A stretch of 63,955 bases of DNA, filler included, from Octopus bimaculoides (lineage: Eukaryota), in NCBI RefSeq assembly GCF_001194135.2. It is 9 parts of 9 records of this genome, joined end to end, with 100 filler letters (N's around TTAATTAATTAA, not from the genome) between each part and the next. Parts side by side here need not be neighbours in the genome. Positions count along the whole stretch, not along the records: positions 22,114 to 33,282 come from NC_068989.1; 8 more parts are not named here. One strand, written 5' to 3'. Positions 24,506 to 33,382 of the stretch are shown piece by piece. Positions within the stretch are counted from its first letter, which is position 1. The number at the start of each line of letters is the position of its first letter. Made by a program: the position numbers and the translations under genes. The notes beneath the pieces were generated by a model that saw only the letters and a program-made list of their open reading frames with translations, made no database searches and was not told the DNA's origin.

Positions 24506-25987
24506 GACATATATTAACATATATATATATGAGCCTTATATTTATCTATATATATGTGTGTGTGTATACACACGCATACACACAGGGAGGGAAAGGTATC
24601 ATATGTCAATTAAAGGATGTAGACCAATGGGTGATTGGTGGTGCGGGTGGGGGTGCGGCACTGTTTATATCAAACGTCAGATCTGGTTGAAGGTGCCACC
24701 CCGATGTAATGTTATTGTTTCACCTTATTTATCAGTGTCAGCACTGCCCTACCCTTTTCCCTATCCCGTTCGCAACACCCTCACCCCCGTCGCTCGACCA
24801 CCTCATCCCACCACCCCTTCATCCTTTTACTAACCACAGTCCAGTTATCACCCCTCGACCTCTATATTCGCCGCCATATCGTACCACGTGACTACGAGTG
24901 TGGTCGTAGTTACCATACTATCAAACATCACCATCGCAACACAAACATTATCAAACTCGACACCAATGCCAAAGAAACTTTACCACAGCCGCCGNNNNNN
25001 NNNNNNNNNNNNNNNNNNNNNNNNNNNNNNNNNNNNNNNNNNNNNNNNNNNNNNNNNNNNNNNNNNNNNNNNNNNNNNNNNNNNNNNNNNNNNNNNNNNN
25101 NNNNNNNNNNNNNNNNNNNNNNNNNNNNNNNNNNNNNNNNNNNNNNNNNNNNNNNNNNNNNNNNNNNNNNNNNNNNNNNNNNNNNNNNNNNNNNNNNNNN
25201 NNNNNNNNNNNNNNNNNNNNNNNNNNNNNNNNNNNNNNNNNNNNNNNNNNNNNNNNNNNNNNNNNNNNNNNNNNNNNNNNNNNNNNNNNNNNNNNNNNNN
25301 NNNNNNNNNNNNNNNNNNNNNNNNNNNNNNNNNNNNNNNNNNNNNNNNNNNNNNNNNNNNNNNNNNNNNNNNNNNNNNNNNNNNNNNNNNNNNNNNNNNN
25401 NNNNNNNNNNNNNNNNNNNNNNNNNNNNNNNNNNNNNNNNNNNNNNNNNNNNNNNNNNNNNNNNNNNNNNNNNNNNNNNNNNNNNNNNNNNNNNNNNNNN
25501 NNNNNNNNNNNNNNNNNNNNNNNNNNNNNNNNNNNNNNNNNNNNNNNNNNNNNNNNNNNNNNNNNNNNNNNNNNNNNNNNNNNNNNNNNNNNNNNNNNNN
25601 NNNNNNNNNNNNNNNNNNNNNNNNNNNNNNNNNNNNNNNNNNNNNNNNNNNNNNNNNNNNNNNNNNNNNNNNNNNNNNNNNNNNNNNNNNNNNNNNNNNN
25701 NNNNNNNNNNNNNNNNNNNNNNNNNNNNNNNNNNNNNNNNNNNNNNNNNNNNNNNNNNNNNNNNNNNNNNNNNNNNNNNNNNNNNNNNNNNNNNNNNNNN
25801 NNNNNNNNNNNNNNNNNNNNNNNNNNNNNNNNNNNNNNNNNNNNNNNNNNNNNNNNNNNNNNNNNNNNNNNNNNNNNNNNNNNNNNNNNNNNNNNNNNNN
25901 NNNNNNNNNNNNNNNNNNNTGTTTTGCATTTATGATAAAATAAATATATACAAATTATAATGAATAATAATAATGAAAATATACAGT

Positions 25988-26139: not shown

Positions 26140-26465
26140 ACTTGTAGCTTAGTGGTTAGGGGGTATTCGGATCACTATCGTTTGGTCGTGAGTTCGATAC
26201 TCGGCGGGCGCATTGTGTTCTTCAGCAAGACACTTTGTTCCACATCGCTCCATTCCACTCAGGTGGTAAAAATGAGTTGTACCTGTAATTTGAAGGAGCA
26301 GCCTTGTTACAATTCTGTGCCTCGCTGAAACTCCTTGCGAGCCACGTCAAAGTGACGCGAGTCTGTGGAGCCCTCAGCCACTTGCGCATAAATTTCACGA
26401 GCAGGCTGTTGTTCCGTTAATCGGATCAACTGGAACGTTTGTCGTCGTAACCGACGGAGGGCCAG
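26140..26465 (+). mobile_element. SINE family C copy
   Basis: Head gtagcttagtggttagg...gagttcgatactc, CORE-like middle, tail ccgttaatcggatcaactggaac...gtcgtaaccgacggag. Confidence 0.8.
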
Positions 26466-26669
26466 TTCTTCCCCAGCTACAGCAGTCTTTCTGTCCACCA
26501 CAAATCCATTTGTCTACTACAGATCTGTTCTACTATCATATTCTTGCTTACTGCAGATACAGAACCGATTTTCCGGACACTGATGATCCGGAACTCATTA
26601 CAGACCACATTAATTAACACTAATTGTACAGATATTTCATTTAATTCCTTTATTTTTTCTTTTACACCT

Positions 26670-26895
26670 TTACTTCTTTCAGTCATTTAACTGTGGCCAT
26701 GCTGGAATACCACATTTAGTTGAACAAGTCGACCCCAGGACTTATTCTTTGTAAGCCTAGTACTTATTCTATCGGTCTCTTTTGCTGAACCGCTAAAGAA
26801 CGGAGACGTAAACGCACCAGCATCGATGCTGGGGTGGACAAACACAGACATACAAACACAAACACATACATATACATATATACGACTGGCTTCTT
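26670..26895 (-). mobile_element. 3' half of SINE family A
   Basis: Reverse complement of the tail and middle of the 55701-56074 copy. Confidence 0.8.
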
Positions 26896-26975
26896 CACTC
26901 CCACCACTGCCACTCCTACTGCCACGGCAACGATTGTACCCCATTGCTATCTGTCTGTCTGTCTGTCTGTCTGCC

Positions 26976-27019
<44 letters not shown>

Positions 27020-27205
27020 GCTCGCTCTCTCTCTCTCCTATTACCATCAAAGTTTTTATCCTTGCTTTCGCCAAAGTATCTTTCCCGCCATCCTTACATT
27101 CTGGTCCAGCTACCGTTATATTATGCACTAGCACCAGCACCAGTACCAGCACCAGTACCACCACCACTACTACCACCACAACGACGACGACGACCACCAC
27201 CACCA

Positions 27206-27262
27206 CCGCCAACTACGCCCTCCACCGCCAACTACGCCCTCCACCGCCAACTACGCCCTCCA
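27206..27262. repeat. 19-bp tandem repeat (ccgccaactacgccctcca)x3 running into a gap
   Basis: aactacgccc begins at 27211, 27230 and 27249. Confidence 0.9.
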
Positions 27263-27999
27263 NNNNNNNNNNNNNNNNNNNNNNNNNNNNNNNNNNNNNN
27301 NNNNNNNNNNNNNNNNNNNNNNNNNNNNNNNNNNNNNNNNNNNNNNNNNNNNNNNNNNNNNNNNNNNNNNNNNNNNNNNNNNNNNNNNNNNNNNNNNNNN
27401 NNNNNNNNNNNNNNNNNNNNNNNNNNNNNNNNNNNNNNNNNNNNNNNNNNNNNNNNNNNNNNNNNNNNNNNNNNNNNNNNNNNNNNNNNNNNNNNNNNNN
27501 NNNNNNNNNNNNNNNNNNNNNNNNNNNNNNNNNNNNNNNNNNNNNNNNNNNNNNNNNNNNNNNNNNNNNNNNNNNNNNNNNNNNNNNNNNNNNNNNNNNN
27601 NNNNNNNNNNNNNNNNNNNNNNNNNNNNNNNNNNNNNNNNNNNNNNNNNNNNNNNNNNNNNNNNNNNNNNNNNNNNNNNNNNNNNNNNNNNNNNNNNNNN
27701 NNNNNNNNNNNNNNNNNNNNNNNNNNNNNNNNNNNNNNNNNNNNNNNNNNNNNNNNNNNNNNNNNNNNNNNNNNNNNNNNNNNNNNNNNNNNNNNNNNNN
27801 NNNNNNNNNNNNNNNNNNNNNNNNNTTTAAACAAACATGGTGTCGCCACTGATAAATATGCACATCACGTGACAAACTGTCCCCCCTCCCCCTCTCTCTC
27901 TGTACTTGTTGTTGTGGCTGCTATTCTCGTCGTTATTGTTGTTATAAAGTTTATTGTACTTTGGGTATTTAGTGAGGCTGTAGGAAACTATCTTTTGCT

Positions 28000-28370
28000 C
28001 TTTTACTTGTTTCAGTAATTTGACAGCGGCCATGCTGGAGCACCGCCTTCAGTCGGAGTAATCGACCCCAGGACTTATTATTCTTTGTAAGCCTAGTACT
28101 TATTCTATCGGTCTTTCTTGCCGAACCGTTACGTTACGGGGACGTAAACACACCAAAATTGGTTGTCAAGCGATGGTGGAGGGACAAACACAGACACACA
28201 CACTCACATATATGTGGGCTTCTTTCGGTTTCCGTCTCCCAAATCCACTCCCAAGGCTTTGGTCGGCCCGAGGCTACAGTAGAAGACACTTACCCAAGGT
28301 GCCATGCAGTGGGACTGAACCCGGAACCATGTGGTTGGGAAGCATGGTTCTTACCACACAGCCGCTCTCT
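28000..28370 (-). mobile_element. Near full-length SINE family A (tRNA-like head, CORE-like ccttgggcaagtgtctt, internal microsatellite, gactgaaacaagtaaaaga tail)
   Basis: Reverse-complement match to 55701-56074. Confidence 0.85.
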
Positions 28371-28404
28371 GTTGATGTATTAATAGTATCTTCTTTTTTT
28401 TTAT

Positions 28405-28952
28405 TTATCTTTTCCTTGTTTCAGTCATTAGACTGCGGCCATGCTGGAGCACCACCTTGAAGAATTCTTCGAATGAATTGACACCAGTACTTACTTTCTT
28501 TAAAGCCTCATAGTATTCTATCGGTCTTATTTGCCGAACCGTCAAGTTACGGGGACGTAAACATACCAACAACAGTTATCCAGCGGCGGTAGGACACACA
28601 TACACACACACGCGTACACTCACGTGCGCGCGCACGCACACACACGCAGACACAGACACATGGACTTCTTTCAGTTTCCGTCCAGCAAATCCTCTCACAA
28701 GGCTTTGGTCTACAAGAGTTGAAATCGACTACGGATGCAGTAACCTCACGCACGGGTATTTCTGGCATTTGGCCGTAGTCTAGTGACTGAAACAAGTAAA
28801 AGAATATATATATAGATATAGACTTGGATTGGTTGTGTGGTATGAAGTTTGCTTCCCAACCACATGTTTGCGGGTTCAGTCCCACTGCGTGGCACCATGG
28901 GCAAGTGTCTTCTACTATAGCCTCGGACCGACCAAAGCCTTGTGAGTCGATT
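28405..28952. mobile_element. Cluster of family A SINE pieces in both orientations
   Basis: 28405-28720 minus-strand tail/middle; 28769-28806 plus-strand tail; 28825-28952 plus-strand head. Confidence 0.8.
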
Positions 28953-29745
28953 TATATATATATATATATATGTATATGTATATATAAATATATAAATATA
29001 TATATATGTATATATATGTATATATGTATGTATATGTATGTGTGTATATATCTGTATATGGTCGTGTTTGTGCGCATGTGTGTAATAAAAGGCGGGTAAG
29101 TTGTGAACGAAGTGATTAGATCCATGCATAAATGCTGAGAAGGAGGAGTGGGAGGATACAACTCTGCCCGTCCTCTTCTGCGCCTCCCCCTCTTCCTCCG
29201 ATTTGTGGAGTGGATTAACCACATGCAGAGTGGATTAGTTTGATGGAGATGAACGACGAAGAACGAAGGGACATACCCCACTCACAGCAGCTTTTGACAT
29301 TGCAAGCACATGCGAAACATCGAGGAGAAGCCACCATTTGTAATACACTAAGTGGATCAGTCACACACGAGTGAACCAATTACAATTAAATTTAACAAGA
29401 AGTGTAACCCACAGGAGGTCCTCTGAAGTTTTAAACTGAGATTTACCGAAGAATCATTTCATTAATTAAATACCAGAAGCGTTTAACCAACCGCGGTTGA
29501 TAGCGTTCTCGCCAAGAATTCTATCTTAGCGACCAACTAATCCTGTCTCGTTGTTCGCGCTCATACTCACATCAGGAGGATATCGCCGGGTAATATACAA
29601 TATACAATATCATGTGGCATGGCCAAACAAGCGTCAGACAAGATTGACTGGAATATTATAGTAGGAGCTTTTTTGCTCTGAAGATAAGGATATTCATGCC
29701 ATGTGAGAGTGAAGCGTGACGGTAAAAATACATCACTTGTTTCAG

Positions 29746-29839
29746 GAAAGCCAGAACGAAACACGAGGTAAATGCAAGGCAAATCACAAGATTTATGATT
29801 TGCCTTGCATTTACTTCGCATTGTTCTGGCCTTACCCAC
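29746..29839 (+). ncRNA. Candidate pri-miRNA hairpin
   Basis: Perfect 19-bp stem gtaaatgcaaggcaaatca/tgatttgccttgcatttac, 9-nt loop, extension with G-U pairs, lower stem gccagaac/gttctggc, and CCAC (CNNC) at 29836-29839. Confidence 0.5.
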
Positions 29840-30344
29840 GATCCTTTATACAATATATATATATAGATATATATATATATATAATGCAATATANNNNNNN
29901 NNNNNNNNNNNNNNNNNNNNNNNNNNNNNNNNNNNNNNNNNNNNNNNNNNNNNNNNNNNNNNNNNNNNNNNNNNNNNNNNNNNNNNNNNNNNNNNNNNNN
30001 NNNNNNNNNNNNNNNNNNNNNNNNNNNNNNNNNNNNNNNNNNNNNNNNNNNNNNNNNNNNNNNNNNNNNNNNNNNNNNNNNNNNNNNNNNNNNNNNNNNN
30101 NNNNNNNNNNNNNNNNNNNNNNNNNNNNNNNNNNNNNNNNNNNNNNNNNNNNNNNNNNNNNNNNNNNNNNNNNNNNNNNNNNNNNNNNNNNNNNNNNNNN
30201 NNNNNNNNNNNNNNNNNNNNNNNNNNNNNNNNNNNNNNNNNNNNNNNNNNNNNNNNNNNNNNNNNNNNNNNNNTATATATGTATGTATATATGTATATAT
30301 ATATATATATATACACGCACATACATATACTCTTTACTCTTTTA

Positions 30345-31805
30345 CTTGTCGAGTGAACATTTGAATTATATGGGATCCGTTTCCGTTTTGACATATTTTG
30401 GTATGGTATTAAAGAGGTAAAGTTTGAGGTAAAGTAATTGTGATGTAATGTTGCTATGTGTCCTGAGTTCGATTTTTATAGTGGGCGGATAGCACGGGGG
30501 CCAAGTCTTGGATGGATTTTAAAATTGATGCCAACATCATTTGTGCAATATTGATGGAATATTTTCCACATAACACAAATGATGTAGCGCTCCCGGCAGC
30601 GTTGGAGAAAGTGGAGATCGAATTTTTTTTAGTCGACCCCAATAGTCAATGCCTCTCATGCTGTCTATCTTTCTTGTTATGGACCTCTGGAGTGCTTCTA
30701 CTTTCATAATGAGTTCTTTCGTATGGAGGGACCACAGTGGGCAACAGTATTCAAGGTGGGGTCGGGCAAAAATAGAGAAGGATGATGGTGTAGGCATCTC
30801 TAGACCGGAAAGTTCTCAGAATCCAGGAGCACATCCCGCAGGCCAAGTCAACCTTGCTGTTTACGTGGGAACTCCAGCTTAGATTGTTATTAACGATTAC
30901 CCGAAGGTCTCTGGTGTTATTGGAGGACACTAGGGAGTCGCTCGAGGGAAGAGCATATGGTAATTTCAGAGTATCCTCTTTTCCAAAGTGGATCAAATCA
31001 AACTTATCTTCATTTAGAAGTATATTGTTTATTTCCGCCCATTGGACAACAGCAAACAGATCTGACTGAAGGCATGTTCCGTCTCTCATGCCGTTTATGG
31101 CTTTTTAGAGTTTGGAATCATTTGCACAGATTTTCAGTATAGAATATTTGATGACGTCTACTATGTCATTGATGTAGATAATGAAGAGGAGTGGGCCCAA
31201 AAGAGTACCTTGTGGGACACCACTACTGACTTTAGCTGAGCTGGATCGTATTCCCTCAAACACAACATGTTGGGTTCTGTTCGTCAGGAAACATTTTATC
31301 CACTGCAGCAGCTTTCCATGGATTCCAATGTTGGACAGTTTCTTCAGCAGGATTTTGTGGTCCACTCTGTCAAATGCCTTGCTGAAATCAAGGTGTGTAA
31401 TGTCAGTGTTGGAGCCCTCTTCCAACGCTTTTAAGATGTCATCAAAATGGCGCAGAAGCTGCGACAGGCAGTCCCTGCCGTCACGGAAACCATGCTGGTT
31501 GGGGTTCAGCATATTGTTGTCTTCGAGGAAGTGAGTTATTCGTGATCCCACCACCCTCTCAAATACTTTAATGATATGAGAAGTGAGTGAAATCGGATGG
31601 TAGTTCACTGCAAGATATTTGTTTCCCATTTTGAAGACTGGAACGACAAACTGGGAAAGAAAATGGTCAGGAATGTAGCCTGCATGAAGTAAGTTTCTCC
31701 AGAGCTCAGCTAGAGGGGGTGCAATTTGATGTCGACACATCTTCAGGACAGTGGTCGGGAGCTCATCGGGACCTACTGCCGAGTTGTACTTGATCTTAAC
31801 TATTT
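30345..31805 (-). mobile_element. CR1-clade LINE, 5'-truncated RT pseudogene
   Basis: SAVGPD, NYHPISLTSHIIKVFER, QHGFR, LDFSKAFDRVDH, GVPQGTLLGPLLF, CANDSKL (decayed YADD), RPHLEYC...LFNTIPKYVKTETDPI*FKCSLDK; stops and frameshifts present. Confidence 0.95.
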
Positions 31806-31813
31806 CTATTAGA

Positions 31814-32147
<334 letters not shown>

Positions 32148-32768
32148 AGCAATGAAAATGGCACGAAGGCTTTCAGAATTATATTTGGTTTCACTTGAAA
32201 AAAATCATGGCAAAGTCACGTACTAAATTATGTTTTAATGTGCTATAGTTTGTGTAGGTGTAATACATATACAGAGTATACAGTGTGTCAAGAAGAACAG
32301 AGAGCAACAATGAGAGCGCGCGTGAGAAGGAGAAAGATAGTGGGGACAAAAGAAAGAAAGAAAGACAGACATAAATAAAAAAGAGAATAGAGGCGAGGGT
32401 AACTATGAGATGAGAAGAATGGAAAGCCCAACGATGAAAGAAGTGGCGAAAAATCTTATAAAAGAAAAACCAGAATCTGCTGCTGGGTCGGATTCGACCA
32501 GTTTCTGAGAATGTATTTGCACTTATGAAGGTACTGCTCTTGGGTTCAGGAAGACCCCCAGATGAAAGGAATTCTACACGATCGTGCGCTTAACTACAGG
32601 TGTTTTGACAACAAACAAGATGAAGACAAATATCCGTCAAATGTAAATAATGTAAATGATGTACATAATTCCTCATCTCTTAAATATAGAACAGAATTTG
32701 TAATGTTTCTCACTTTGATCCAGTGTTCCACTTTACGGAGGAATAAAGACCCAGTGTTATTATTTAAA

Positions 32769-32829
<61 letters not shown>

Positions 32830-33382
32830 GTTGTTGTTGGTTTCTTATGTTACTTCTACGAATGCACACGCAAAATATATGATTCTTCAGTAAAATCAAG
32901 GGAGACTTTAAACCTTCGTAAAAATTCTTACAGAAGCGTAACTCATTAAGGCTCAGTCAACCGAATCTGAATGAACTGGGTTTCTGTAAGGAACCTACAA
33001 AACTTTAAGTCACGTGTGGCCGAATCAAACTGTTTAAAAATAACATAAGTAACTCCTGTTGAATGTGTTGAGCACCTTTTTGCTTTTGTTTGGCCGTTCA
33101 CTCGTATATGTATACATGGTGGATGTGGGTTGGGTGTGTGATTTTGTGTATGTATGTATGTATGTATGTATGTATGTATGTATGTATGTATGTATGTATA
33201 TATAATCTATATTTATGTAAATTTGTCTATAAACATCCATATATATATTTATATGTATGTCGATGTCTATGTCTATATATATNNNNNNNNNNNNNNNNNN
33301 NNNNNNNNNNNNNNNNNNNNNNNNNNTTAATTAATTAANNNNNNNNNNNNNNNNNNNNNNNNNNNNNNNNNNNNNNNNNNNN

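What the first reader, a model, noticed from the sequence alone, without database searches (positions are those of the whole stretch)
29746..29839. Best candidate for a novel microRNA gene
Seen: perfect 19-bp upper stem, 9-nt loop, 4 more pairs including G-U, an asymmetric internal loop, then a lower stem (gccagaacga/ttgttctggc), about 35 bp in all. CCAC (CNNC) lies about 17 nt past the predicted 3' cut near 29818-29820. Two G-U pairs favour the plus strand. No TA/TSD ends or second copy in the window. Established: a roughly 35-bp stem plus CNNC is the Microprocessor signature. Predicted 3p arm is about UGAUUUGCCUUGCAUUUACUUC, which I do not recognise as a known family.
Basis: partly seen in the sequence, partly recalled or inferred. 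Interest (0 to 1): 0.7.

Follow-up and report, generated by a model that had tools for sequence, protein, structure and literature searches.

The report
Unverified microRNA-like hairpin in octopus DNA
The hairpin is real and has the right shape for a microRNA precursor, but nothing available shows it is a microRNA gene, and equally strong hairpins made by mobile elements turn up about once or twice per 20 kb in other octopod DNA, so it is most likely an ordinary inverted repeat.

Summary
Bases 29750-29830 form a 33-bp hairpin: a 23-bp upper stem with one G-U, a 9-nt loop, a 4x2 internal loop and a 10-bp lower stem with one G-U. MFE is -50.6 kcal/mol (z = -15). A CNNC (CCAC, 29836-29839) lies 17 nt past the 3' cut predicted from the basal junction.

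One claim fails. The G-U pairs do not favour the plus strand, because the minus strand folds at least as well (-55.4 kcal/mol).

The geometry fits MirGeneDB and Microprocessor expectations (about 57-nt precursor, about 35-bp stem), but the basal UG, apical UGU and mGHG motifs are absent. No Rfam family matches (best 28.5 bits against a gathering score of 100).

The defining tests for a microRNA could not be run: small-RNA reads, orthologues and genome copy number. The setting is repeat-rich, non-coding octopod draft sequence with SINEs, a LINE and microsatellites.

Unselected 20-kb samples of Octopus sinensis and Argonauta hians each hold one or two equally strong or stronger complex hairpins. 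Three of the four look like MITEs and the fourth is a long near-perfect palindrome.

Best reading: a mutation-made palindrome (template switch or decayed MITE) that resembles a pri-miRNA. I put a genuine microRNA gene at about 0.12. Interest is low.

The parts
29750..29759 (+). Lower stem, 5' strand (GCCAGAACGA)
   Evidence: Pairs with 29821-29830: 10 bp including G29758.U29822. Pair probabilities are 0.88-1.0 in a 334-nt context.
29760..29763 (+). Internal loop, 5' side (AACA). [quoted passage not shown]
   Evidence: Unpaired in the plus-strand MFE. The ruler is taken from PMC6004053. The cut site is an inference.
29764..29786 (+). Upper stem, 5' arm (CGAGGTAAATGCAAGGCAAATCA); candidate 5p arm
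   Evidence: 23 bp with 29796-29818, one G-U (G29767.U29815) and 19 consecutive Watson-Crick pairs.
29787..29795 (+). Terminal loop (CAAGATTTA, 9 nt)
   Evidence: On the minus strand three further weak pairs can shrink it to 3 nt.
29796..29818 (+). Upper stem, 3' arm (TGATTTGCCTTGCATTTACTTCG); candidate 3p arm
   Evidence: It is the reverse complement of the 5' arm with one transition.
29819..29820 (+). Internal loop, 3' side (CA). The predicted 3' Drosha cut is 29819|29820.
   Evidence: for the structure and for the ruler. The cut site is an inference.
29821..29830 (+). Lower stem, 3' strand (TTGTTCTGGC)
29836..29839 (+). CNNC motif (CCAC). Its first C is 17 nt past the predicted 3' cut.
   Evidence: Read from the sequence. 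The chance rate is 12-16%. The minus strand has no CNNC at the matching position (read).
29090..29749 (.). Unique, non-coding upstream flank between two TA-rich microsatellites
   Evidence: No Pfam hit for any ORF, no internal repeats, and no homologue of the ORF that crosses the hairpin.
29853..29893 (.). (TA)n microsatellite that runs into the assembly gap 29894-30273

Best explanation
This is a real, apparently single-locus 81-bp DNA palindrome in repeat-rich, non-coding DNA of an octopod draft genome. It was made by a mutational mechanism, not by chance and not demonstrably by selection. The likeliest origin is an inverted duplication by replication template switching, which can create a perfect stem in one event. 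The other origin is a short TIR-only mobile element (MITE) that has since picked up two transitions and a small indel in its outer arms.

Because the DNA is palindromic, a transcript of either strand folds into a stable hairpin of 33 bp or more. On the plus strand the dimensions (10-bp lower stem, 4x2 internal loop, 23-bp upper stem, 9-nt loop, CNNC at +17) would make it a competent Drosha/Dicer substrate if the locus is transcribed. It is therefore best described as a pri-miRNA look-alike, or at most a proto-miRNA, and not as an established microRNA gene.

Shown here: the structure, its non-random nature, its non-coding repeat-rich setting, the lack of any known family match, and the common occurrence of look-alikes in octopod DNA. 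Inferred: the mutational origin, the cut sites, and the absence of a selected function.
For: Structure and significance. Both strands fold (-50.6 and -55.4 kcal/mol), as expected of a DNA-level palindrome and not of a strand-specific RNA gene.

Arm comparison: the central 19 nt are identical, and every difference (2 transitions and one 4-versus-2 indel cluster) lies in the outer 16 nt. That fits a recent inverted copy or centre-homogenising template switching.

Template switching is documented to create perfect miRNA-sized hairpins in a single event. About 6,054 such hairpins arose in primate genic regions, but only 18 of the template-switch loci are curated MirGeneDB genes (PMC10710096).

Setting: SINE copies, a LINE reverse-transcriptase fragment and microsatellites, with no coding exon.

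Base rate: O. sinensis locus L015 (20.6 kb) holds a 93-nt-arm palindrome and a 63-nt-TIR element. Argonauta hians locus L017 (20.7 kb) holds two related hairpins (-53.4 and -41.9 kcal/mol in 94 nt) that share sequence and TIRs. Octopus genomes are about 66% repeats and include Tc1-Mariner, hAT and MITE families (PMC13282606).

No Rfam family reaches threshold at the hairpin. Made1/mir-548 shows that an 80-bp palindromic MITE can look exactly like this (PMC1784062).
Against: The hairpin's dimensions match Microprocessor and MirGeneDB expectations unusually well: about 35 bp in total, a predicted 57-nt precursor, and a CNNC exactly 17 nt past the cut.

The paired region that stayed perfect is the part that would form the miRNA/miRNA* duplex, and the differences cluster at and below the predicted Drosha cut. 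Selection on a miRNA would also produce this pattern. If the 3-4 differences fell at random, the probability that all land in the outer 16 of 35 positions is about 0.04-0.10 (my calculation).

Against a MITE: there is no target-site duplication, and no second copy in 9.3 kb of the piece or in about 84 kb of other sampled animal loci, of which the two named ones are octopod.

Octopods are known to have gained many lineage-specific miRNAs (90 novel families), so a further young one is plausible.
Confidence: 0.6

Rival explanations
1. It is a genuine, lineage-specific canonical microRNA gene on the plus strand, either already in MirGeneDB as an octopus 'Novel' family or still unannotated. The pri-miRNA would be cut by Drosha near 29762|29763 and 29819|29820, then by Dicer, giving a duplex of about 22 nt.
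For: The stem is 33 bp plus a 4x2 internal loop, close to the 35-bp optimum, and the loop is 9 nt. The predicted precursor is 57 nt with an MFE of -35.5 kcal/mol. A CNNC sits at +17 on the plus strand only. Arm and loop sizes lie within the MirGeneDB 3.0 ranges. Octopods gained 90 novel miRNA families. The hairpin is unique within all sequence that could be searched.
Against: No expression, processing or conservation evidence could be obtained. Basal UG (AG here), apical UGU/GUG and a mismatched GHG are all absent. The duplex would have 21-22 pairs of 22, against 19 +/- 1.6 in curated miRNAs. The minus strand folds as well or better. CNNC occurs by chance at 12-16%. The base rate of look-alike hairpins is roughly 1e4-1e5 per genome against about 160 curated genes. 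The sequence is absent from the held supplements of the octopus miRNA paper, but the precursor files themselves are not held, so this is weak evidence.
Confidence: 0.12
2. It is a member or relic of a short palindromic mobile element (a MITE made almost entirely of terminal inverted repeats, like human Made1). It would be present in many copies in the genome, and any small RNAs from it would be siRNA-like or mir-548-like by-products.
For: The architecture (two arms of about 35-37 nt around a 9-nt spacer, 81 bp in total) closely mirrors Made1, which has 37-bp TIRs, a 6-bp spacer and 80 bp in total. MITE-like palindromes were found in both unselected octopod samples, and in Argonauta two related copies lie 2.6 kb apart. 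TIR transposons and MITE families are annotated in Octopus vulgaris. The hairpin lies about 25 nt upstream of a TA microsatellite (29853-29893), and the L015 elements directly abut TA runs.
Against: No TA or other target-site duplication is present at any plausible boundary. No second copy, even with 3 mismatches, exists in the piece. There is no BLAST hit in about 84 kb of other loci. That sample could only detect families of more than about 1e4 copies.
Confidence: 0.22
3. It is an assembly artefact, a fold-back or chimeric palindrome created near a contig end.
For: The hairpin ends 63 nt before an assembly gap (29894-30273) in a draft scaffold with many gaps.
Against: The arms are imperfect (two transitions and an indel), the palindrome does not reach the contig end, and unique sequence and a microsatellite lie between it and the gap. 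Fold-back artefacts are typically perfect and terminal; that last point is my own knowledge.
Confidence: 0.03

Closest known systems
Canonical bilaterian pri-miRNA hairpins (MirGeneDB criteria; Microprocessor model of Han, Auyeung, Fang and Bartel, and Nguyen)
   Same: A stem of about three helical turns, a precursor of about 57 nt, a loop of at least 8 nt, more than 16 paired positions between the arms, and a CNNC about 17 nt past the 3' cut.
   Different: There are no read, offset or conservation data. Basal UG, apical UGU and mGHG are missing. The duplex is nearly perfect, where curated miRNAs average 19 pairs of 22. The hairpin folds equally well on both strands. It matches no family model.
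Template-switch-mutation (TSM) hairpins / de novo proto-miRNAs (Monttinen et al. 2023, PMC10710096)
   Same: A perfect inverted copy lies next to its source with a short spacer, is the size of a miRNA stem, sits in non-coding DNA, and has a few later point changes.
   Different: The defining evidence for a TSM, an outgroup or ancestor that lacks one arm, could not be obtained.
Made1 MITE / hsa-mir-548 family (Piriyapongsa and Jordan 2007, PMC1784062)
   Same: An element of about 80 bp made of two arms of about 37 nt around a very short spacer. Either strand forms a stable hairpin.
   Different: No TA target-site duplication, no detected second copy, and no sequence similarity to a known element in the material available.
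MITE-like palindromes seen here in O. sinensis (L015 13197-13404 and 13895-14166) and Argonauta hians (L017 about 14850 and about 17430)
   Same: Complex-sequence, near-perfect inverted repeats in octopod non-coding DNA, with folding energies equal to or stronger than this hairpin.
   Different: Those have longer arms (63-93 nt) or long TIRs outside the hairpin, and the L015 ones directly abut TA runs. They share no sequence with the window's hairpin.

Membership tests
Canonical animal microRNA gene (MirGeneDB / Fromm et al. 2015 criteria) | A hairpin whose two arms (20-26 nt) pair at 16 or more positions | tested here: met
   The upper stem is 23 bp with one G-U, so a 22-nt duplex would have 21-22 pairs. 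MirGeneDB reports 19 +/- 1.6.
Canonical animal microRNA gene (MirGeneDB / Fromm et al. 2015 criteria) | Loop of at least 8 nt and a precursor of about 60 nt (under 80 nt in molluscs) | tested here: met
   The terminal loop is 9 nt and the predicted precursor 29763-29819 is 57 nt.
Canonical animal microRNA gene (MirGeneDB / Fromm et al. 2015 criteria) | Small-RNA reads from both arms with 2-nt 3' overhangs (Drosha and Dicer offsets) and homogeneous 5' ends | not testable with these tools
   No small-RNA read data are accessible. The supplements held for PMC9699675 contain no precursor or mature sequences.
Canonical animal microRNA gene (MirGeneDB / Fromm et al. 2015 criteria) | Presence in at least a second species (required for a named family; used by Zolotarov et al. 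for octopus) | not testable with these tools
   The orthologous locus could not be reached. The ORF-based look-ups and homology search were empty. A control search with the abundant SINE ORF was also empty, so the database has no ORF-level coverage of Octopus non-coding DNA. The O. sinensis locus retrieved is a paralogous LINE copy. The criterion itself is stated.
Microprocessor substrate (pri-miRNA features) | Stem of about 35 bp between the basal and apical junctions | tested here: met
   10 bp, a 4x2 internal loop and 23 bp on the plus strand. The minus strand gives 38-41 bp.
Microprocessor substrate (pri-miRNA features) | CNNC 16-18 nt downstream of the 3' cleavage site | tested here: met
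   CCAC at 29836 is +17 from the cut 29819|29820 predicted by the 13/11-nt ruler. The minus strand has none. The chance rate is 12-16%.
Microprocessor substrate (pri-miRNA features) | Basal UG at -14/-13 | tested here: not met
   Positions 29749-29750 read AG. Only about 24% of conserved human pri-miRNAs carry this motif, so its absence is weak evidence.
Microprocessor substrate (pri-miRNA features) | Apical UGU/GUG about 22 nt from the 5' cut | tested here: not met
   Positions 29784-29786 read UCA and the loop is CAAGAUUUA.
Microprocessor substrate (pri-miRNA features) | Mismatched GHG / CmR motif in the lower stem | tested here: not met
   The 10-bp lower stem has no mismatch. The only interruption is the 4x2 loop at the predicted cut.
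Any described RNA family (Rfam 15) | Covariance-model score at or above the family's gathering score | tested here: not met
   The best hits over the hairpin are mir-624 at 28.5 bits (gathering score 100), mir-4536 at 28.4 (76), mir-3338 at 24.4 (95) and mir-4703 at 23.1 (88). These are generic hairpin matches.
MITE (miniature inverted-repeat transposable element) | Terminal inverted repeats | tested here: met
   The whole element is an inverted repeat. This is trivially true for any palindrome.
MITE (miniature inverted-repeat transposable element) | Target-site duplication flanking the TIRs | tested here: not met
   The flanks are ...TTTCAGGAAA| and |CTTACCCACG. No TA and no 2-10-bp direct repeat is present at the 29747/29833 or 29750/29830 boundaries.
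MITE (miniature inverted-repeat transposable element) | Multiple dispersed copies in the genome | tested here: inconclusive
   No copy in the 9.3 kb of the piece or in about 84 kb of other loci. The source genome could not be searched. The 19-mer hits in prokaryotic, viral and metagenome collections are chance matches without the second arm.
Template-switch-mutation hairpin | A perfect reverse-complement copy next to its source | tested here: met
   19 nt are identical (22 of 23 with one transition), with a 9-nt spacer.
Template-switch-mutation hairpin | An ancestral or outgroup sequence lacks the inverted copy | not testable with these tools
   No orthologous sequence is available.
Mirtron | Hairpin ends coincide with the splice sites (5' GU ... 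AG 3') | tested here: not met
   On the plus strand the stem starts GCCAG and ends CUGGC. The minus strand has GUAAGG at its 5' base but no AG at its 3' base, and that hairpin would be about 85 nt long.

The most novel reading that the evidence does not exclude
The hairpin is a very young, octopod species-specific or genus-specific microRNA gene caught shortly after its birth by inverted duplication or template switching. It would be transcribed from the plus strand and processed by Drosha and Dicer into a near-perfect duplex, and would be absent from MirGeneDB because that annotation required presence in two octopus species.
Probability: 0.12. Interest if true: 0.35.

Novelty: new member of a known kind. 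Interest (0 to 1): 0.15.

Why it matters
If it proved to be a processed microRNA, it would add one more young locus to the already documented octopod microRNA expansion. It might also give an invertebrate example of microRNA birth from a single inverted-duplication event. That would be useful but incremental.

As it stands, its main value is a caution for the scan. In octopod genomes, a stem of about 35 bp plus a CNNC is not a specific signature of a microRNA gene. Palindromic elements of equal or greater stability appeared in both unselected 20-kb octopod samples examined here.

Tried and rejected
1. Known RNA family. An Rfam scan at permissive E-values gave only sub-threshold generic hits at the hairpin. 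The strong-looking mir-297, mir-3149 and mir-466 hits elsewhere are TG/TA microsatellites.

2. Finding the sequence in the literature. The arm strings occur in no paper of the library. They are also absent from the held supplements of the octopus miRNA paper and its preprint. The precursor files (Data S1 and S4) are not held, and the seed table is truncated. MirGeneDB 3.0 has no held supplements. The O. vulgaris repeat paper's held supplement does not contain the arms. None of these null results is informative.

3. Reaching the same or an orthologous locus through ORFs. Exact look-ups of four window ORFs failed. A homology search with the ORF crossing the hairpin found nothing. A positive-control search with an ORF from the hyper-abundant SINE also found nothing, so the null says nothing about copy number.

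4. DNA pattern scans of the metagenome, prokaryotic-genome and viral collections. The 14 hits to the 19-mer all lack the second arm and the flanks, and their number is about what chance predicts for collections of that size.

5. The O. sinensis LINE homologue as a possible orthologue. Only the LINE and a SINE align, and the unique flank does not.

6. Coding potential around the hairpin. No Pfam domain was found apart from the LINE reverse transcriptase.

7. tRNA or SINE-head origin. ARAGORN found nothing.

8. The bacterial promoter and terminator scan is not applicable to this eukaryotic DNA and I ignored it.

9. Mirtron reading: rejected (see the membership test).

Full report
**What is there**

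The sequence at 29746-29839 reads GAAAGCCAGAACGAAACACGAGGTAAATGCAAGGCAAATCACAAGATTTATGATTTGCCTTGCATTTACTTCGCATTGTTCTGGCCTTACCCAC. As plus-strand RNA it folds as follows:
- a 10-bp lower stem, 29750-59 with 29821-30, including G29758.U29822;
- an asymmetric internal loop, AACA opposite CA;
- a 23-bp upper stem, 29764-86 with 29796-818, made of 19 consecutive Watson-Crick pairs, then G29767.U29815, then three more pairs;
- a 9-nt loop.

The MFE is -50.6 kcal/mol, against -15.0 +/- 2.4 for dinucleotide shuffles (z = -15, 0 of 200 as good). The helix persists with pair probabilities of 0.88-1.0 when 334 nt are folded. At this base composition, a perfect 19-bp inverted repeat with a short spacer is expected about 1e-6 times in the 9.3 kb of real sequence and about 0.3 times in a 2.7-Gb genome. 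The repeat is therefore the product of a mutational mechanism and not a coincidence.

**What does not hold**

They do become C.A mismatches on the minus strand, but the minus strand gains wobble pairs across the internal loop and at the apex. It folds at least as well: -55.4 against -50.6 kcal/mol for the same 94 nt, -58.9 against -52.2 in my sliding scan, and -68.2 against -57.1 with 154 nt. Thermodynamics cannot assign a strand. This symmetry is what a DNA-level palindrome gives.

The only strand-specific feature is the CNNC. [quoted passage not shown] The cuts then fall at 29762|29763 and 29819|29820, and CCAC at 29836 is exactly +17. The minus strand has no CNNC between +12 and +22 (read). 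However, a CNNC within a three-position window occurs at 12-16% of positions in this DNA, so it is worth a likelihood ratio of about 4-5 at best.

The other Microprocessor motifs are absent. Positions -14/-13 read AG and not UG. Positions 22-24 of the 5p arm read UCA, and the loop has no UGU or GUG. The lower stem has no mismatched GHG.

The ruler puts the 3p 5' end nearer 29798-29800. The seed therefore cannot be predicted to better than +/- 3 nt.

**Fit to curated microRNAs**

MirGeneDB 3.0 reports arms of 22 +/- 1 nt, a median inter-arm loop of 15-16 nt (minimum 5-7), a mean precursor of 60 nt (under 80 nt in molluscs), and 19 +/- 1.6 paired positions. The predicted precursor 29763-29819 is 57 nt with an MFE of -35.5 kcal/mol. 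It would give 21-22 paired positions, which is inside the range but 1.3-1.9 SD more perfect than usual.

No Rfam family comes near threshold over the hairpin (best is mir-624 at 28.5 bits against a gathering score of 100). The structural prerequisites for a miRNA are therefore met, and the hairpin belongs to no described family. The criteria that actually define a miRNA gene could not be tested with the tools available: reads from both arms with 2-nt offsets, 5' homogeneity, and presence in a second species.

**Setting**

The piece is a draft scaffold with four internal gaps. It carries:
- three direct copies and one inverted copy of a SINE (26648-28953);
- microsatellites;
- a LINE reverse-transcriptase fragment on the minus strand (about 30346-31817; Pfam RVT_1, E = 7e-24).

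The best named relatives of the reverse transcriptase are from Octopus sinensis (78% identity) and Argonauta hians (59%). The LINE and SINE align to an O. sinensis chromosome at 80-90%.

The hairpin sits in about 760 bp of unique, non-coding sequence (29090-29850) bounded by TA-rich microsatellites. It ends 63 nt before a gap. No ORF in that stretch has a Pfam hit. No other strong hairpin lies nearby, so it is not part of a cluster.

**Base rate**

Copy number and conservation were out of reach, so I asked how common such hairpins are in unselected octopod DNA. I scanned the 20-kb loci retrieved around paralogous LINE copies with the same 94-nt window and a complexity filter.
- O. sinensis L015 contains a 93-nt-arm, 98%-complementary palindrome (13197-13404, -73 kcal/mol in 94 nt). 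It is preceded by a TA run and followed by TA. L015 also holds a 63-nt-TIR element (13895-14166).
- Argonauta hians L017 contains two hairpins (-53.4 and -41.9 kcal/mol). They share sequence with each other, and the first shows long terminal inverted repeats, so they belong to a MITE-like family. The first has an architecture of about 20 bp perfect plus outer pairs, much like the window's hairpin.
- Two further loci of unknown animal origin, L018 and L019, show several windows at -44 to -54 kcal/mol.

One to two per 20 kb extrapolates to 1e4-1e5 per 2-3-Gb genome. Curated octopus miRNA genes number 162-164. O. vulgaris is about 66% repeats and has annotated Tc1-Mariner, hAT and MITE families. 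In primates, about 6,054 miRNA-sized hairpins created by template switching in genic regions compare with only 18 template-switch loci curated in MirGeneDB. The prior for any one such hairpin being a miRNA gene is thus at most a few percent. The good geometry and the CNNC raise it to roughly 10-15%.

**Origin**

The arm-to-arm alignment shows that the central 19 nt are identical. All differences (two transitions and one 4-versus-2 indel cluster) lie in the outer 16 nt. Three readings fit:
- a recent template-switch copy laid over an older imperfect palindrome, or centre-homogenising switching;
- an old 37-nt-TIR element like Made1, which has 37-bp TIRs, a 6-bp spacer and is 80 bp long, decaying from its ends;
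- selection on the duplex region of a miRNA.

The clustering of the differences is only marginally non-random (about 0.04-0.10 by my calculation). Against a MITE, there is no target-site duplication and no second copy in anything I could search. That search would only detect families of more than about 1e4 copies. An assembly artefact is unlikely, because the arms are imperfect and the palindrome is not terminal.

**Verdict**

The most likely reading (about 0.6) is a mutation-made palindrome that looks like a pri-miRNA and has no demonstrated or selected small-RNA function. Within that reading, I favour a single-locus inverted duplication or template switch over a MITE relic. I put a genuine young miRNA gene at about 0.12, a multi-copy MITE at about 0.22 (this overlaps the best reading) and an artefact at about 0.03. 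Interest is low. Read mapping and a genome BLAST would settle it within minutes once cephalopod data are at hand.

Noticed in passing
window 26648-26820, 27981-28372, 28390-28710 (direct copies) and 28831-28953 (inverted copy): Several copies of one SINE (core ...CAGTCATTTGACTGCGGCCATGCTGGAGCACCGCC...), 70-87% alike. It also occurs in O. sinensis L015 (80%) and in part in Argonauta L017 (83%). The pair 28241-28363 / 28831-28953 is inverted (123 nt, 89% complementary, 467 nt apart). If transcribed it would form a long double-stranded RNA, which is the kind of substrate ADAR editing acts on.
   Followed up: partly
window 30346-31817, minus strand: A degraded non-LTR retrotransposon (LINE) fragment with a reverse-transcriptase domain (Pfam RVT_1, E = 7e-24). 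It is 87-90% identical in DNA to a copy on O. sinensis chromosome CM016864.1. The apparent 327-aa ORF is extended artificially through a CA/TA microsatellite.
   Followed up: yes
window 31900-32150, 24350-24580, 30271-30333, 33154-33221: The strongest Rfam hits in the piece (mir-297 at 61.9 bits, mir-3149, mir-5014, mir-466) all fall on TG/CA/TA microsatellites and stay below their gathering scores. They are low-complexity artefacts and not miRNA genes.
   Followed up: yes
L015 13197-13404 and 13895-14166 (Octopus sinensis CM016864.1): One is a 208-bp near-perfect palindrome (93-nt arms, 98% complementary), preceded by a TA run and followed by TA. The other is a 272-bp element with 63-nt terminal inverted repeats. 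Both resemble Tc1/mariner-type MITEs or foldback elements. Neither shares sequence with the window's hairpin.
   Followed up: partly
L017 about 14826-14975 and about 17425-17560 (Argonauta hians BAAFZT010000004.1): Two related hairpin-forming elements lie 2.6 kb apart. They share ...GGGATAGAAG..TTTCGCTG... and a ...GGTAAGATATTTTT.CTATTATTGCATTG... end. The first also shows the matching inverted end (CAATACAATGCAATAATAGG...), and the left end of the second lies in a TA run. This looks like a MITE-like family whose members resemble pri-miRNA hairpins (-53.4 kcal/mol in 94 nt).
   Followed up: partly
window 29740-29745 (+) and 29829-29834 (-): Splice-site-like strings flank the hairpin: TTTCAG|G four bases before the stem on the plus strand, and GUAAGG at the 5' base of the stem on the minus strand. 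They lie on opposite strands and do not define a mirtron. They are probably coincidental.
   Followed up: partly
window 29764-29771: If the 5p product started at C29764, its positions 2-7 (GAGGUA) would equal the let-7 seed hexamer. The start is uncertain by +/- 3 nt, and the rest of the sequence is unrelated to let-7, so I treat this as coincidence.
   Followed up: no
window 23701-23815 vs 24242-24353; 22807-22867 vs 26410-26470: There are unexplained dispersed or tandem direct repeats: two blocks of about 110 nt that are 82-90% alike and 540 nt apart, each followed by a microsatellite, and a 61-nt pair that is 84% alike and 3.6 kb apart. They are probably further repeat-family fragments.
   Followed up: no
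L018 and L019 (ENA assemblies ERZ25071824 and ERZ25073829): These 'metagenome' assemblies contain long animal contigs (LINE reverse transcriptase; a Peptidase_M1 exon) with prokaryote-style ORF calls. They lack the octopus SINE, so they come from some other animal host.
   Followed up: no
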